A stretch of 63,559 nt of DNA, filler included, from Reticulomyxa filosa (GCA_000512085.1; 23 parts of 23 records of this genome joined end to end with filler, not necessarily neighbours in it); one strand, 5' to 3'; numbered from the whole stretch's first letter, positions 27,333-35,408 are shown. Notes: generated from the letters alone by a model not told the origin. A program made the numbers and translations.

Positions 27333-28167
27333 GCATTATGTATGTATATATNNNNNNNNNNNNNNNNNNNNNNNNNNNNNNNNNNNNNNNNNNNNTTAAT
27401 TAATTAANNNNNNNNNNNNNNNNNNNNNNNNNNNNNNNNNNNNNNNNNNNNCCCCCCTCCGATGAACCATTTTAAAACTTTCGCAACATTTATCCTCGCT
27501 TTTTTTTTTCCTATTTGTTAATTTATTCCGATCTCGTCGACTACTCAAAAAAACTGGTTGTGCAAGCGTAATTAATTATGCAAAAACAAACTGGCTTTTT
27601 GATAGGAAATATTTTGGTCTATAATAATTCGTTTTTTATGTGGAGGAGGGAAGGGGGGGAGGGGGGGGAGAAAAAAAACCACTTTGTTTTGGTACATATG
27701 TGTCCGCACGTTTTTTCGCACATGCCAAGCAGATGTTTTGTCTGACGAATTATCATAAACTGATGCGCATATATGATCCGATAGAAATAATACTTTGTCA
27801 AAAGAAGCTGCAAGTTTTTATAAAATGAAAAACACGCCAATTAAAAGATGTAAGTTGAAGTGTTTCCACATATTTTTTATTCAAAATAATGTTATTCTGT
27901 AAACTCTTAGAAAATAATGTTCGCAATCACTTCGTTTTGTCACATAATATGATGCAAGAGTGCTATGATTTGATGAAATATGTAATTTTTGTGATAGCAC
28001 TAGAATACCCTTTTAATACATGAATTTTATTATTTGATTTGCACTCCATATTTTGACGGCTTTGCATTGGAAGAAGAAACAAGTTTAATTCTTTCATAAT
28101 ATTATCAATATTTTTTTTTTTTTTTAAACTCAAAAGCAATAACAAAAATGTATTATTTACCACAATA

Positions 28168-30606
28168 TTACACATCATTCATCAACTCTTTTATTTTATG
28201 TTTTACTTTCAGTGTTTCTGCATGCACTTCTCCCAATGCTGCGCTGTAAATTTTATATGCTTCTTCAAAATATTTCAAAGCTGTTTTTTTTTCTTTTTGC
28301 TGTTCAAATGCACATGCCAAATTCCAATTGGAATCACCAATGGATTTATTTGTTTTTCCAAATACTTCTTTTCTTATTGGTAATTCTTTTTTATAACATT
28401 CAATTGCTTCATTGTATTGTCCTTTGTTATGATATGAAAGTCCTAAAATTGTATACAAAGAAGCGATATGAGTGCGATTTATTCCAAAACAATTTGATCT
28501 GATTTTCAATGACTTTTCACAAAATTCAATTGCTTTATCATAATTTTTCTTTATTGTAATATACAAGTCCTAAATTATGATATGAAGAAGCAATCTCAAC
28601 ATGATTAGCTCCAAAAATTGCCAATCTAATTTTAAAAGCTTTTTCATGACATTCTTGTGCTTTTTCACCATGCATTATATTGACATATGAAAGTCCTAAA
28701 TTGTTATATGAATGTGCAACATCAGCATGAATACCGCCAAAAATGTATAATCTTATTTTTAATGATTTTTTATAATATTCTATTGCTTTATTAAATTTTT
28801 CTTTCTTGTCATATGCATTTGCTAAATTAAAATATACTTGTGCAAGAAAGGTACTTTTTATACCAAAACGATTTAAAATAATTTTCAATGATTTTTTATA
28901 TAATTCAATTGCCGTTCAGGGTCTTTTTTATCAGTATGCATATTTCCAATTATGTTATAACAAGTAGCAACATAAGGATGATCTGATCCAAAAGTATTAG
29001 TTGCAATTTGTAAATATTGTTGTAAATAATTAATAGATGCATCAAAAAATTTTTTTTCTTTACATTGATCTCCTTTATCTTCAATATCTTGAAGTAATAA
29101 TGGAATATCGTAATGTATTTTGGTATTCCATTGAATTGGAGATGTCAATTGTTTTAATTGTTGATCAATTATAGCATTCTTTGTAACAAATAATTGTGTT
29201 GTAATATTTGCATTTCTTTTGCATATAAGTTTGCAATCAACAGCATATATATTTCCATCAATATTTATTTCTTCTTCCAATATAATTAATTTTTTTTTAA
29301 TTACAAACATACAATATTCTCCAAATTCCTTTTTATCATTCTTTTCATTACTTATTAATGTCATAAATAAAGAAATATTATCACGTTTATTTTTCCATCC
29401 AGGTGAATTGTATATAATTACTATCAATCCTTGTTCATTTTTGTCTAGCATTTCTTTTACTATTTTTGCTGCTTCTGTATTTGCCTTTCTCCATCGCTTA
29501 CTCCAATGTCTCTTAAAATTCAAACCTTCTGGAATGTTATCTTTTTTAATGACTGGTTGTTCATCGTTATTATCATCACTATTTACATTTTCATCTGGAT
29601 CAATGCTGTTATAATATTTTTGATATCGCGATATTGGAACAAGATAAGCATCAGAACGAAAAGTTGAAATTGTTTGAATAGTTTCGCTTATAGATTCTTT
29701 GTTAAGAATAATTTGTGTAACTTGTTCAATGATAGAATTCCAACTATTTATATTGTCTTTAATTTTTTGACGAAATATTTTTACAAAATTACTTCCTTTT
29801 CTTTCATTCTTATCTTTTAAATCATCGACAATACATTTTGGTGTTATATTAACAAAAATTGTTAATATATCTTCATCATAATTATCTTTTTGAATTATTT
29901 CATTTTCTGGATTCATTTTAATTTGATTATGTTTTCCTTTATATGTAACGTTTATAAATATTTTTGGTTTTCCAATAAAATAATCTGTTCTTTTCACAAA
30001 ATCATATTGAATAGATTTGAAATCTTTTGTATTCATATCACTTGTAATTAATGCATCTTGATTGCTTGCAACTCCTCCATATCCACACCATACAAATATT
30101 AATCCATCATAATTGTTATCGTGATCAAATAAACTTGTATAGTGATTTAAAAGAAAATTTTCCAATCGATTTAAAGAAAGTAATTCAGTACATTGATTAA
30201 ATTGATTATATGTGCTGAATACTCGATAACCAAATTTAGATTGAAATAATGCTTGTAATAGCCATAAATCTTCTTGAGCATCTTTCAAATAGGGTAATTG
30301 TTCATATTTCATTGCTCCAACCATTAATATTAATGGATTCTTTATTGCTCGTACTGGTGACGGTATTGCTTTTTTTTTTAATTCTAAAGTAAAGTATCGT
30401 CTATCTGATGTAAATACGCGAAGTATATCTTCATTTGTTTCAATAAAACAACCATCTTCGCCAATAATCTTAATCAATTCACTATTCACATGTGTTGACT
30501 GAGTGGCTTCAGCAATCTGTTGTCTCAGATGTTTCACTGTCAATTCTTTCAGAATTATTGTATGCACTTTGATACCATCGTTTACATACACTTTGTATGA
30601 GGACAT
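28168..30606 (-). CDS. Beta-grasp (PB1/CIDE-N-like) + catalytically dead caspase-fold (peptidase C14-like) domain + TPR array; two 1-bp frameshifts in the TPR region (error or young pseudogene)
   Basis: KNPLILMVGAMKY...DLWLLQALFQSKFGYRV...YDGLIFVWCGYGG...GKPKIFINVTYKG...DILTIFVNITP...GSNFVKIF. Then come ~42-aa TPRs (HADVAHSYNNLGLSY, KAIEYYKKSLKIRLYIFG). Frameshifts lie near 28914 and 28545. Confidence 0.8.
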
Positions 30607-30844
30607 TTTACAAATTACTCGTTAATCTTTTTTTTATTAGCGCTTCAAAAAAAAAAAGTTTGAGAACGTAAAAGAAAGAAGCTCCCTCCACAATAATAAT
30701 GGATGGGAAATATGAATTTATTAATTTTATTTGGAAAATGTTTTTTGTATGTAAGTAAACAAAAAGTAAATTTTCTCGTATTTTTCATTGTCAAAAAAGA
30801 GGGTTTCAAAAAAGTTCCTGTTTTGTTTTGGAAACAGTTAGAAA

Positions 30845-32014
30845 ATGTACAATGATATTAACAAAAAAGTGACTACAACCTCACAACTGGTAAAGAATTT
30901 TTTTTCTTGTTATTAATGTCAGTTTGTTTGGATGAATTAAACAAAACAAAACAAAACAGTCAGAAAAGGTAGTAAGACTAATTATTCAAAATTGGACTCG
31001 AATTTTGAATGTAAAAACAGGGTGGATTAATGATTTTGACAAACTTATTGTTAAATATGTTAAGTTATTTATTTTTAATTAAATTTAATTTTATCATTAT
31101 AATATTTTTTAAAAATATAGATGAAATACTTTCAATTAGTGAAAAATTTACAAAGACATAAAGATACAATAAATAGTGTAAAATTTTCATCAGATGATCT
31201 TATGATTGTTTCGTCTTCAGATGATAATACTATTCGAATATGGGATTTATTATCAGGAGAACAAATTCAAAAATTTAAAAAACATTTAAGTTGGGTTAAT
31301 GCTGCAATATTTTCATCAAATGGGAATACTGTTGTTTCATGTTCAAAAGATAAAACCATTCGATTATGGGATATACAATCAAGAAAAACATTAATGAAAT
31401 TTGAAGGACATACAGGTTCTGTATGGGATGTAAATTTTTCCAAAAATGGAAAATATATTGTTACAGGTTCATCTGATAGAACAATACGATTATGGGATAT
31501 AAATTCTGGAAAAGAAATTCAAAAATTAGAAGGACATTTAGATTATGTAAACAGTGTACAATTTTCACCTGATGGTCAATTAATTGTATCTGCTTCTAAT
31601 GATGAAACTGTTGCTATGTGGAATGTTAAAACAGGTGAAAGATTGAAAGTGTTAAAAGGACATTCTAATAGTGTAACATGTGCAAGATTTTCTCCAAGTG
31701 GTAAATTTATTGTATCTTCTTCTGGTGATAAAACAATTCGAATATGGGATGTAGAATTTGGAAAAGAAGTAAAAGTATTGGAAGGACATTTAAGTTGGGT
31801 GAAAGATGTCAAATATTTCCCTGATGGTCAAACTATTGTGTCAGGTTCGTATGATGGAACAATCCGTTTGTGGGATGTGAAATCAGGAAATCTAATTCAG
31901 AAATTGGAAGGACGAGCTTTTTGGGTGACAGGAGTGGATATTTCATCTAATGGAAATACAATTGTGTCATGTTCTGCTAACAAAATAATTCAAATATGGG
32001 AATGCATTTTATAA
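30845..32014 (+). CDS. Intact WD40-repeat protein (subfamily B, seven ~42-aa repeats); 3 exons
   Basis: Exons 30845-30889, 30960-31058 and 31121-32014 are joined by phase-0 GT-AG introns. Repeats follow LEGH...V.SV.FSPDG..IVS.S.D.TIRLWDV. Confidence 0.9.
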
Positions 32015-32745
32015 TAAAAAAAAATAATACAATATTATTTTTTCAATTTTTTTAAAATAACATTAATTGTATCTTCAGAATAACGATAGTTTTTTCATTT
32101 TTCAAAATTGTCATTCACAAACGACAAATTATTAATCCTTGGGTTTTTGGAATGTAGGTACAACATAGCAAATATCCCTTAGTTGCAGTCTTCTATAATT
32201 AAGTTTCAAAATGACTTTTGCAAAATTTTGATCTTATATTTGTTTTAATGGCAAGACTAGAACTTTGAATACTGATGACGCCAGCCATATCACTTTCAAA
32301 TTTTGAGATCAACATGAAAGATAAGAAAAAAATGGAACTGGATCCTTTTTGGGAAACCTTTCTATTTCAACATAATTTTTTCTGTTTGACTTTCCAAATA
32401 TCACTTCTTGCTCTTTTTTTCTTTGCCCTCTTTTTGAAATTGAAAGGCAATTTCTTGTACATTCTTTGTTATTTCATATTTGCGCTGCATTCATAAAATA
32501 TGTCAAAATTATTCACACTTTAAGCTGCTCAAATTTAAAGAAAAAATTTGAAGGTTCATTGAAGAAAAGCCAATGCTGTTACTACGGCAAAAAAAAAAGC
32601 AGGCAAAAAAAAAAAGGAAGCAAAAAAACTTCCTTGTTCTGTTTCTACTTGTTACAATAGAGATTGATTTTTGATTTCAAATGAATCACAAGGCTAAACA
32701 GACAGCATTTGAAATCATTGGCAAAAATATTAGTTTGTAATAAAG

Positions 32746-34186
32746 TCATCCCCAAACACGAATATGGCCTTTGTTTGAGCCATAATACAAGTTAACATTA
32801 CAATTATTATTATTATTTCTGATTTCCTTTTTTTGTTTTTTCAATGGTATAAACTTAAGACAAAATATTCCATTATCATTCTCATCTCCTTTGATCACAT
32901 ATAACTCTTTTTTATTTGATCGAATATCCCAAAATCGAATTGTATTATCTTCTGATGCTGAACATACCACATTTGAACTAGCACTAATTTCATTATTACT
33001 TACCAATGGAAAATATTCAACACACGTTACAGTATTTGTATGTCCTTTGAATGTTTGAATTTGTTGGCCAGATTGAATATCCCATAAACGAACACTTTTA
33101 TCACATGATCCAGATAATATTGTATTTGAACCACCAATATTTCTTAATTCATTGGATCCATATTTTACACTCTTTACTTCTCTTTCATGTCCTTCGAATA
33201 CATTCAACTGTTTGGTTGTTTCGATATCCCATATACAAATGTTTTTGTCACGTGATCCAGAACAAATGGTATATCCATTACCACCGATTATGCCAATACT
33301 ATTACTTGTATTATCAGCACAACTTTGTAATGGTGAAATATTCACACATCGAACAGCATATTTATGTTCATTGAAGACATACAATGACGATGATGTTTCA
33401 ACATCCCATAGACGAATTGTTTTATCATTAGATCCAGAACATAAATATCTACCACCACTAAATGGCGAGAATTCAATAGAACAAATCGAATCAGTATGTC
33501 CCTCTAATATTTGTAATTGTTGAGTATCTTTGATATCCCAAAAACGGATGGTTTTGTCACATGAACAAATGATGTGAAGAAAAAGATTGTTACGATGATA
33601 CAATGAAAATTTTGCACATTGTGCAGCACTTGAATGTACTTTGGATAGTTGTATTTGTTTATTGCTGTTTATGTCCCATATACGAATCGTGTTATCACGT
33701 GACCCAGAACAAATGAATTCACAATTATCAAATATTGAATAATCAATGCTCCATACAGTACTAGTGTGTCCAGTCAATGTTTTGAGTATATTGGATGATG
33801 AATGAAACATATCAAAGTTAAATATAGAATGCTTGCTGGATTTGGATTGTAATAATTTATTATCGTCATCATATTCTTTTCTATCTTCATTATTATTGTC
33901 TTGCAGTTTTATAATTTCGTCAGGCTTTAATTCCATTTTTTTCTTCCATTTTTCAAATTCGGTCAGGAGAGTGTCCTATTGATATTATTTGTCTTTCTTT
34001 TTTTTTTTATATTACATCATAAAACAAAAATATTAACATACCAGTTGTTGCCTTAAGATTAAGTTACCATTGTGAATTGTTGAAATTTTTTTTTCATTTA
34101 ATTCTTTTTCTATTTTCATTTTTTCATTTTCCAATTTCAGTTGTGTTATTTCCTCCTATATTATATTAATTCAAGTAATAGACATC

Positions 34187-34226
<40 letters not shown>

Positions 34227-34320
34227 AATATATCAAAACAATAAAATCTTACATTAAGTTGTTGAATTTGTTTCGTCTGTTTGTTATCATTTTCTTTGAG
34301 CTGTTCGATTTTTTCTCCCT
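32746..34320 (-). CDS. Coiled coil + WD40-repeat protein (subfamily A), 5'-truncated by contig end
   Basis: The last exon 32746-33975 is intact (IEFSPFSGGRYLCSGS, IGIIGGNGYTICSGS, ending IRVWG*). Upstream coiled-coil exons 34042-34155 and 34253-~34320 are separated by GT-AG introns 33976-34041 and 34156-34252. Confidence 0.9.
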
Positions 34321-35408
34321 TTTTTTTTTTTTTTTTTTTTTTTTAATTTGTTTTTTTTTTTTTNNNNNNNNNNNNNNNNNNNNNNNNNNNNNNNNNNNNN
34401 NNNNNNNTTAATTAATTAANNNNNNNNNNNNNNNNNNNNNNNNNNNNNNNNNNNNNNNNNNNNTCCGTTAGTATTTAAGGAGGTAATGTAGTGACTTTCC
34501 CTACACTAGTGTATAACTTATGCTTGTTCATATGACATAACAGACTAAATTTTATGAAAATACCTACATTTTATGTTCAGTCCAAAACTACGCTTAATTT
34601 CAAATAGAGCTAGCCTGTCACTTATTTGTAAAATAGTTTCAATTTGTTTTTCAAAAAGCTAGTTTATTTGTGTTGAACAGTTGCCAATTTTACAACAATA
34701 TGTTTCATTATGTTATCACAATGTTTTTTTTCAAATTTTTTTTTGTTAATGTTCAAACGCGAACGCTAATTTCGATTGAAACAACATGCGTTTAAATGAA
34801 GAAAATTCAAAAAAAAAGCTGTTGAAAATATTCAATCAATTTGTCTAAGTGGCATAACACAATACATTAGATTATTTATTGATCTAGGATCGTGCACGAG
34901 AAACGATCTAAGTACAAGATTTGGAAAGATTACAAGTGTAAAAAATGTGCCTAACATAAAGATTTAACAAGAAACTGCACAAAAAAAAAAAGAAGGATCA
35001 GGTACACAATTATACAATACTCTATTCAATTGACAAAATTTGAAAAATATTTTCCGTTGCCCCTCTTGCAAACGCCTGATGCATTTTTTATTTGTTGGTC
35101 ATGATATTTGCGAATGCAAAAAAGACGTGTTTTCTGCCAAACCGATTGGTCAGCAAGGACAATTGCAATAGACTTGAAAGGAGGGACAAACAAACAAAAA
35201 AAAGCGTGAGAGGAGGCATGAGGAAGATCAATTGAAAAAAAAAAAGCAAAAACAAACAAAAAGAAAAACAAAATTAACAACAATTTGTTTAAAGCTGTGG
35301 GATGAAATTACAATTAAAGTAGGAAAAATGAACAATTGTTTTATATTTTTTTTGAAGTTTTTTTGACAAAAAAAAGAAGATAAAAACAGAAGGAAAGAAG
35401 AAAAAAGA

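What the first reader, a model, noticed from the sequence alone, without database searches (positions are those of the whole stretch)
28168..30606. Beta-grasp / metazoan-type pseudo-caspase / TPR-array protein in a protist
Seen: an N-terminal ~76-aa domain with a K-containing first strand and an acidic GEDGCFIETNEDI motif, a full caspase-like p20/p10 pattern including GKPKIF, and a C-terminal array of ~42-aa TPRs. Both catalytic positions are Tyr: WCGYGG (TAT at 30079-30081, where caspases have SHG) and VTYKG (TAT at 29941-29943, where caspases have QACRG). Each TAT is one transition away from CAT or TGT. Known: GKPKxF is typical of metazoan caspases and related bacterial C14 enzymes rather than metacaspases. 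PB1 and CIDE-N domains oligomerise, and dead caspases such as cFLIP regulate active ones. Inference: a polymerisation module, a pseudo-protease and a repeat sensor together form an immune- or death-signalling receptor, and I know of no functional description of such a protein in this lineage.
Basis: partly seen in the sequence, partly recalled or inferred. Interest (0 to 1): 0.8.

Follow-up and report, generated by a model that had tools for sequence, protein, structure and literature searches.

The report
Dead caspase-TPR gene in a foraminifer
This is one copy of a large gene family in the amoeba-like foraminifer Reticulomyxa filosa; it joins a PB1-like clustering domain, a caspase-shaped domain whose two catalytic residues are both tyrosine, an unknown domain and TPR repeats, and most of its sister copies have also lost those residues.

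Summary
The minus-strand gene at 28168-30606 is Reticulomyxa filosa RFI_23031.

- **N-terminus (aa 1-80):** a confident beta-grasp fold whose best structural matches are PB1 domains.
- **Rest of the protein:** a conserved unassigned domain, then about seven 42-residue KLC-type TPRs.
- **Frameshifts:** two single-base shifts (about 28912 and about 28545) interrupt the TPRs. No reads were available, so sequencing error and real decay cannot be separated.

The dyad loss is not private to this copy. Of 53 caspase-bearing R. filosa paralogues, 5 keep His+Cys and 12 are Tyr/Tyr. The tree needs at least 13 His and 11 Cys changes. In the nearest outside relatives, 22 of 24 keep His+Cys. Motifs flanking the dyad stay 83-100% conserved, and dN/dS in close pairs is 0.26-0.9.

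The best reading is a non-catalytic pseudo-caspase scaffold in a birth-and-death family. An immune or death-receptor role is untested inference. Caspase-like proteins in Reticulomyxa were already published, but not this architecture or the dead dyads.

The parts
30367..30606 (-). N-terminal beta-grasp domain (aa 1-80), PB1-like. It has Lys5 on strand 1 and the acidic GEDGCFIETNEDI motif at aa 49-61.
29602..30351 (-). Caspase-fold (p20/p10-like) domain, aa 86-335, lacking both catalytic residues.
30079..30081 (-). TAT = Tyr176 at the catalytic His position (WCGYGG).
   Evidence: Read directly from the sequence and from alignment column tables. In the family this column is Y 28, H 20, N 2, R 2, G 1.
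29941..29943 (-). TAT = Tyr222 at the catalytic Cys position (GKPKIFINVTYKG, compare GKPKLFxIQACRG).
   Evidence: Read directly from the sequence and from alignments. In the family this column is Y 27, C 8, N 5, W 4 and others.
29518..29601 (-). Low-complexity acidic linker (aa 336-363).
   Evidence: pLDDT is below 50 in the model and the region is variable in alignment A1/A2.
29107..29517 (-). Conserved 'mid' domain (aa 364-500): a long helix followed by about 8 short strands. No fold or family could be assigned.
   Evidence: pLDDT is 82-97. It is conserved across paralogues (A4). Many of the best 150 profile hits match only this part of the profile, without a caspase domain, and all those sampled were R. 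filosa proteins. There is no consistent Pfam hit, no PDB sequence hit and no atlas hit above 0.85.
28168..29094 (-). About seven 42-aa TPRs of kinesin-light-chain / TPR_12 type, in three reading frames, ending at the TAA at 28168-28170.
   Evidence: Pfam TPR_12 scores 2.5e-5, 1.6e-24 and 4.1e-19 on the three pieces. PDB sequence matches are KLC1/KLC2 TPRs. TRF finds a period of 126.
28911..28915 (-). Frameshift J1. One base is missing relative to the TPR register (...DKKDPER^AIELYKKSLKI).
   Evidence: Sequence and three-frame reading. tblastn shows a frame change with a -7 nt gap and no stops.
28542..28549 (-). Frameshift J2. One extra base sits in an A5/T2 run (...YYNKE^(N/K)YDKAIEF).
   Evidence: Sequence. 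tblastn shows a frame change with a -5 nt gap.

Best explanation
The gene is one member (RFI_23031) of a Reticulomyxa filosa-specific, strongly expanded family with the architecture PB1-like beta-grasp, caspase fold, acidic linker, conserved mid domain and KLC-type TPR array.

The family descends from a catalytically competent, animal-/bacterial-type C14 caspase. Within R. filosa the His/Cys dyad has been lost many times independently, while the fold and its flanking motifs were kept. This copy has Tyr at both positions, so it cannot act as a cysteine protease.

It most likely works, if expressed intact, as a non-catalytic pseudo-caspase scaffold or regulator. The TPR array would bind a ligand or partner. 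The PB1-like domain and the caspase-like dimer surface would bring it together with sister proteins, possibly the few copies that still have His+Cys, in the way FLIP(L) pairs with caspase-8.

Shown: the folds, the dead dyad, the family-wide pattern, and purifying selection on relatives. Inferred: oligomerisation, pairing with live paralogues, and any cell-death or immunity role.

Whether this copy is intact depends on two single-base frame breaks that may be assembly errors.
For: - **Identity and family:** 47 R. filosa-only hits, with RFI_23031 at 97% identity. A profile search gave 656 hits, 109 at E<=1e-30.
- **Folds:** for the PB1-like domain; for the caspase fold, including cFLIP among the top hits.
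- **Dyad states:** among 53 family members the pairs are HC 5, YY 12, HY 11 and the rest mixed. In 24 outgroup domains, 22 are HC.
- **Tree:** the family is monophyletic (SH-aLRT 99) and needs at least 13 His-state and 11 Cys-state changes.
- **Site conservation:** the W, C, G, K, P, K, I and F columns next to the dyad are 81-100% conserved, against 52-53% for the dyad columns. Catalysis is dispensable but the structure is not.
- **dN/dS:** whole-gene values are significantly below 1 in three close pairs (0.35-0.61). A Cys-less caspase domain gives 0.26 (0.16-0.44).
- **Indels:** coding indels between close paralogues are multiples of three.
- **Precedents:** FLIP(L) has Arg315/Tyr360 at the dyad and activates or limits caspase-8 by heterodimerising (PMC7586951). 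Bacterial pseudo-orthocaspases carry Tyr/Ser (PMC6426788).
Against: - This copy carries two frameshifts in the TPR region that could not be verified. If they are real, the product is truncated after about 1.5 TPRs.
- The family does contain genuine decay. There is an in-frame stop in the mid domain of the P0045 locus, and the caspase domain of the P0039/P0041 pair evolves at omega 0.88 (0.53-1.62).
- The closest paralogue of this copy is only about 55% identical, so selection on this copy itself cannot be measured.
- His-to-Tyr and Cys-to-Tyr are both single transitions towards A/T in a genome of about 27% GC. Tyr may therefore be a mutational default rather than a selected residue.
- There is no expression, interaction or activity evidence, and no NTPase switch domain.
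Confidence: 0.55

Rival explanations
1. This copy is an ordinary recent pseudogene in a rapidly turning-over gene family. The dyad is gone, the two frameshifts are real, and nothing functional is made beyond, at most, a truncated 573-aa product.
For: There are two frame breaks in about 900 bp. Another family locus has a true nonsense codon. One pair shows near-neutral evolution of the caspase domain. J1 sits at only a 2-base run, which is not a classic homopolymer-error site.
Against: No nonsense codon occurs in any of the three frames used (573+116+132 codons; P about 1e-6 to 1e-26 by chance). All 248 codons downstream of the first break remain open, and the C-terminal segment aligns to that of paralogue P0003 at 48% identity. 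Direct frameshifts without any stop also occur in L001, L002 and in the His/Cys-intact copy L007, mostly at A6-7/T7 runs. That gives 6 indels against 0 stops in 4 loci, a pattern more typical of homopolymer sequencing error than of decay. The assembly is a very fragmented draft with N50 3.6 kb (PMC13746701).
Confidence: 0.3
2. The protein is intact but has nothing to do with death or immunity. It is a TPR adaptor, for example for the very active microtubule transport system of Reticulomyxa, in which the dead caspase fold is only a structural or dimerisation module.
For: The TPRs are most similar to kinesin-light-chain TPRs. Many profile hits carry the mid+TPR module without any caspase domain, some with Kelch motifs. 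91% of copies lack the dyad.
Against: KLC-type (TPR_12/TPR_10) repeats are generic and also occur in nephrocystin-3, which matched these TPRs here (Pfam TPR_NPHP3), and, from general knowledge, in STAND sensors. Relatives of the caspase domain outside the family are fused to NACHT, WD40, Ank, SPRY and Kelch, the typical partners of conflict or immune-type proteins. A few copies keep an intact dyad.
Confidence: 0.12
3. The domain is still a hydrolase that uses another nucleophile, for example the nearly invariant Cys174 of the WCG motif two residues before the former His.
For: Cys174 is 94% conserved, more than either dyad position.
Against: The general base position is also lost and is variable (Y/N/R/G). 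No alternative His is conserved. In the outgroups, which still have the normal dyad, that position is mostly Ser, Leu or Val. No geometry check was possible.
Confidence: 0.03

Closest known systems
FLIP(L) / CFLAR, the vertebrate pseudo-caspase
   Different: FLIP has tandem DEDs, not a PB1-like domain. It has no mid domain and no TPR array, and it is a single gene rather than a family of 50 or more copies. His is replaced by Arg there and by Tyr here. Heterodimerisation is shown for FLIP and only inferred here.
Caspase-like proteins of Reticulomyxa filosa reported by Klim et al. 2018 (PMC5982838); ETO10778.1 is used as an outgroup in PMC10959488
   Same: Same organism and the same PF00656-related caspase lineage, which groups with animal caspases.
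   Different: Those papers treat them as caspase homologues only. TPR, PB1-like and mid domains, the family size and the loss of the dyad are not mentioned. This copy itself does not reach PF00656.
Bacterial pseudo-orthocaspases (Tyr/Ser variants; PMC6426788) and bacterial caspase-repeat proteins (caspase-Sel1/TPR cluster; caspase-NACHT L010 and caspase-TPR L011)
   Same: A C14 fold with His replaced by Tyr, and fusion of a caspase domain to TPR, Sel1, WD40 or NACHT modules.
   Different: They are prokaryotic, have no PB1-like or mid domain, and have Ser rather than Tyr at the Cys position. Most bacterial and outgroup relatives found here keep His+Cys (22/24).
PB1 domains (p62, Par6/aPKC, NBR1, MEKK3) and Par3-NTD / CIDE-N
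   Same: Same beta-grasp topology and size. There is a Lys on strand 1 and an acidic D/E-x-G-x-x-x-E-x-D/N-E-D stretch where PB1 domains carry the OPCA motif. They are the best structural matches.
STAND/NLR-type receptors with TPR sensors (NB-ARC/NACHT-TPR)
   Same: An effector-like N-terminal part plus a C-terminal 42-aa TPR array, and lineage-specific expansion.
   Different: No NACHT, NB-ARC or any P-loop domain was detected in this protein. The mid domain occupies that place and has no recognisable NTPase motifs.

Membership tests
Peptidase C14 / caspase (clan CD) fold | Caspase/hemoglobinase alpha-beta-alpha sandwich with p20- and p10-like halves | tested here: met
Peptidase C14 / caspase (active enzyme) | Catalytic His-Cys dyad (SHG ... 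QACxG) | tested here: not met
   Tyr176 and Tyr222 occupy the two aligned positions.
Peptidase C14 / caspase (Pfam PF00656) | Sequence match at Pfam's gathering score | tested here: not met
   There is no PF00656 hit for this copy even at E<=1. 16 of 41 paralogue segments do hit, the best at 1.3e-19, so homology is by transitivity plus structure.
Animal-type caspase rather than metacaspase | GKPK(L/I)F before the Cys strand, GSxF motif in the p10 half, and closer structural match to caspases than to metacaspases | tested here: met
Pseudo-caspase (FLIP(L)-like regulator) | Caspase fold without a catalytic Cys, retained under selection | tested here: inconclusive
   The fold and the dead dyad are met. 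Selection is shown only for relatives (omega 0.26-0.46 in two pairs and 0.88 in a third), not for this copy.
Pseudo-caspase (FLIP(L)-like regulator) | Heterodimerises with, and modulates, an active caspase paralogue | not testable with these tools
   Five His/Cys paralogues exist (P0026, P0029, P0038, P0059, P0065), but no interaction data could be obtained.
PB1 domain | Beta-grasp fold of PB1 type | tested here: met
PB1 domain | Sequence-family membership (PF00564), conserved strand-1 Lys and OPCA acidic motif | tested here: inconclusive
   PF00564 reaches only E 0.06, in 1 of 33 members. Lys5 and an acidic motif are present in this copy, but Lys5 is in only about half of the paralogues.
TPR (TPR_12 / kinesin-light-chain type) | Tandem helix-turn-helix repeats of 34-42 aa matching the Pfam TPR models | tested here: met
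   TPR_12 scores 1.6e-24 and 4.1e-19 against a gathering score of 30.1 bits (observed 86 and 69 bits). The DNA period is 126 nt.
STAND / NLR receptor | Central NACHT or NB-ARC P-loop NTPase | tested here: not met
   There is no such Pfam or PDB match in the protein or in 41 paralogue segments. A distant metagenomic relative has caspase+NACHT.

The most novel reading that the evidence does not exclude
The R. filosa family works as a sensor/executor network. Dozens of diversified, catalytically dead PB1-caspase-TPR 'sensor' proteins would recruit and activate, by PB1-type polymerisation and caspase-like heterodimerisation, the few paralogues that keep His+Cys. This would give a giant, self-fusing syncytial foraminifer an NTPase-independent caspase-based immunity or allorecognition and death system, evolved independently of animal apoptosis.
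Probability: 0.15. Interest if true: 0.85.

Novelty: new variant of a known kind. Interest (0 to 1): 0.5.

Why it matters
Caspases proper are usually regarded as an animal invention, and Reticulomyxa is one of the very few protists reported to have close homologues. This work shows that these homologues are not simple caspases. They form a large multidomain family (PB1-like, caspase, new domain, TPR) in which about nine copies in ten have lost the catalytic dyad, repeatedly and independently, while keeping the fold.

That bears on two points. First, R. filosa sequences are used as 'caspase' outgroups and as evidence for caspases in the last eukaryotic common ancestor, so their real architecture and catalytic state are relevant. 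Second, the family offers a natural series of live and dead caspase folds for studying how pseudo-proteases arise.

If the live/dead copies cooperate, it would be a caspase-based signalling system outside animals. The work also documents that the public gene model for this locus is wrong in three places.

Tried and rejected
- **Reads:** The look-up of sequencing runs listed no run for this locus, so read laying was not used and the frameshifts remain unchecked.
- **Mid domain:** Pfam on 41 members, the ESM-atlas feature search (best 0.85, below the useful range), a PDB profile search (best E 0.16) and structure searches of the two-domain model (filled by caspase hits) gave no assignment.
- **Introns at the frame breaks:** rejected. 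The breaks are -7/-5 nt overlaps with no room for an intron, and the 42-aa register is restored by plus or minus one base.
- **Euplotes-type programmed +1 frameshifting:** rejected. There is no AAA-TAA/TAG site, the organism is a foraminifer, and the two breaks go in opposite directions.
- **Bacterial-symbiont origin of the contig:** rejected. Paralogues have GT-AG introns of 58-85 nt and there are more than 100 related genes.
- **dN/dS for this copy:** not attempted. The nearest paralogue is about 55% identical, so dS is saturated, and close paralogue pairs were used instead.
- **Dyad state against TPR presence from gene models:** abandoned. Short 'caspase-only' models are annotation splits, since L007 and L008 have mid+TPR directly downstream.
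- **Genome paper:** the Glöckner 2014 paper is not held. The sequencing chemistry (my recollection is 454 plus Illumina) is unverified.

Full report
**What is there.** The piece (27452-34363) is AT-rich, at about 27% GC. On the minus strand an ORF of 573 codons (28885-30606) is followed by two further open stretches in other frames (28538-28888 and 28168-28566) that continue the same TPR array to a TAA at 28168-28170.

The word-index protein search identified the locus as Reticulomyxa filosa RFI_23031 (97% identity; the differences are annotation gaps). It also found 46 further hits, all from R. filosa. The contig belongs to the draft assembly GCA_000512085.1 (and later), which has an N50 of 3.6 kb (PMC13746701).

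Every sequence statement is correct.
- WCGYGG has TAT at 30079-30081.
- GKPKIF is followed by VTYKG, with TAT at 29941-29943.
- The acidic motif lies at aa 49-61.
- The TPRs have a period of 126 nt, or 42 aa.
- Pfam recognises only the TPRs in this copy (TPR_12 at 1.6e-24 and 4.1e-19). It does not recognise Peptidase_C14.

**Domains, tested by structure.**
It has no Pfam, PDB-sequence or atlas match.

**The dyad across the family.** A full HMMER profile search found 656 relatives. I extracted 77 complete caspase domains.
- The 53 that carry the family's WCG signature are all R. filosa where sampled, and they form one clade (SH-aLRT 99).
- The other 24 are outgroups. They include two Bolivina argentea (foraminifer) proteins fused to SPRY or Kelch. 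They also include metagenomic proteins fused to NACHT, WD40, ankyrin or TPR_12.
- Two contigs that I fetched look bacterial: L010 (47-50% GC, with a transposase) and L011 (29% GC, with RecA and Ank genes).
- Outgroups keep His+Cys in 22 of 24 cases.
- In the family only 5 of 53 do; 12 are Tyr/Tyr, 11 are His/Tyr, and the rest are a scatter of N, R and G at the His site and N, W, S, I, D, T, F and E at the Cys site.
- On the tree, built without the two columns, at least 13 His-state and 11 Cys-state changes are needed (many inner branches are weak, so these are minimum counts on an uncertain topology).
- The columns around the dyad (L-I-F-V-W-C-G and K-P-K-I-F) are 81-100% conserved, while the dyad columns are 52-53% conserved.

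The loss is therefore not unique to this copy. The fold is under constraint and catalysis is not.

Both His-to-Tyr and Cys-to-Tyr are single transitions towards A/T. In this genome Tyr may simply be the commonest first step once selection on the residue is lifted.

**Selection.** This copy's nearest paralogue is about 55% identical, so I used three close pairs whose DNA I fetched.
- Nei-Gojobori omega for whole genes is 0.39, 0.35 and 0.61, and all bootstrap intervals are below 1.
- For the caspase domain it is 0.46 (0.22-1.28) in P0018/P0025 (Tyr/Asn).
- It is 0.26 (0.16-0.44) in P0042/P0045 (His/Tyr).
- It is 0.88 (0.53-1.62) in P0039/P0041, which have also lost GKPK.
- The mid and TPR domains give 0.30-0.58.
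- Coding indels between close paralogues are multiples of three.

At least some dyad-less caspase domains are under purifying selection, and others are drifting. No sign of positive selection on the TPRs was seen at this coarse level.

**The frameshifts.** J1 (28911-28915) lacks one base and J2 (28542-28549, an A5/T2 run) has one too many. With those corrections the 42-aa register continues without a stop to the natural C-terminus. No sequencing run was listed, so this is unresolved.

Indirect evidence favours errors slightly.
- Direct frame breaks without any nonsense codon also occur in L001 (A7 run), L002 (T7 run) and twice in L007, a copy with an intact His/Cys dyad (an A7 run, and a TPR site before YDK).
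- That makes six indels and no stops in four loci, an indel-only pattern typical of homopolymer miscalls. My recollection is that 454 data were used, but this is unverified.

Against this, J1 is at a 2-base run. Real decay also exists in the family: there is an in-frame stop in the mid domain at L004. I put real frameshifts at about 40-45%.

**Annotation errors.** The public model RFI_23031 hides both breaks. It skips almost one TPR and reads part of another in the wrong frame. It also removes a 51-nt GT-AG 'intron' that in fact encodes 17 residues matching the family consensus.

**How it probably works.** With Tyr/Tyr it cannot be a cysteine protease. The conserved fold, the oligomerisation-type N-domain and the TPR array point to a non-catalytic scaffold or regulator.

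The best-understood precedent is FLIP(L), with Arg315/Tyr360, which controls caspase-8 by heterodimerising with it (PMC7586951). Pseudo-orthocaspases with Tyr/Ser are a bacterial precedent (PMC6426788). Pairing with the five live paralogues is an attractive idea but an untested one.

An immune, death or allorecognition role is suggested only by analogy. The analogy rests on the expansion, the repeat sensors, and relatives fused to NACHT, WD40, Ank and SPRY. There is no NTPase domain, so this is not an NLR.

**Novelty.** Caspase-like proteins in Reticulomyxa are published (PMC5982838; used as an outgroup in PMC10959488). The architecture, the new mid domain, the family size and the recurrent dyad loss are not mentioned there or in any paper I could find. 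I class the finding as a new variant of a known kind: a pseudo-caspase with repeat fusions.

Noticed in passing
window 29473-29523 (-), and around 28830-28975 and 28540-28600: The public gene model RFI_23031 (738 aa) is wrong in three places. It removes a 51-nt in-frame 'intron' that encodes 17 residues (GLNFKRHWSKRWRKANT) matching the family consensus. It also bridges the two frameshifts with invented introns, dropping about one TPR and reading 'LYITIKK' in the wrong frame.
   Followed up: yes
window 29107-29517 (-): A conserved domain of about 135 aa (helix plus about 8 short strands; motif ...IDGNxYxxxCxxxCKxNxxITxQLFVT...) has no Pfam, PDB or atlas match. Many of the best 150 profile hits match only this part of the profile, without a caspase domain; all those sampled were R. 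filosa proteins, and some carry N-terminal Kelch motifs.
   Followed up: partly
window 31121-32014 (+) and 32746-33936 (-): Two stand-alone seven-bladed WD40 genes (297 and 396 aa) flank the gene. WD40 genes also lie next to family members at L002 (4228-5301) and L006 (3196-5973). This may only reflect a very large WD40 complement in this genome.
   Followed up: no
L002 1527-1596, L007 1811-1878, L008 1666-1750, L004 3256-3313: Paralogues have a GT-AG intron of 58-85 nt between the PB1-like domain and the caspase domain. The window copy has an uninterrupted short linker there, which suggests intron loss in this lineage.
   Followed up: partly
L004 about 4325: There is a genuine in-frame stop codon inside the mid domain of the P0045 locus (YSIYSFY*KKIIF, where the paralogue has ...FHSKKIIF). 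The annotation splits the locus into two genes. The family therefore contains at least one real pseudogene or truncated member.
   Followed up: partly
L007 about 2735 and about 4255; L001 about 790; L002 about 2480: Single-base frame breaks, three of the four at A7 or T7 runs, occur in other family loci, including a copy with an intact His/Cys dyad. The annotation hides them as introns or gene splits (for example the 'caspase-only' models P0026 and P0029 have mid+TPR directly downstream).
   Followed up: yes
window 30085-30087 (-), Cys174 of WCG: The Cys two residues before the former catalytic His is 94% conserved in the family, more than the dyad itself, whereas outgroups mostly have Ser, Leu or Val there. 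Its role is unknown.
   Followed up: no
L010 2735-6016; L011 5001-6581: Among the nearest non-Reticulomyxa relatives are a caspase-NACHT protein on a bacterial-looking contig (47-50% GC, with a transposase) and a His/Tyr caspase-TPR_12 protein on a 29%-GC contig. The 29%-GC contig also carries RecA and ankyrin genes, which suggests an intracellular bacterium. Bolivina argentea has caspase-SPRY and Kelch-caspase proteins.
   Followed up: partly
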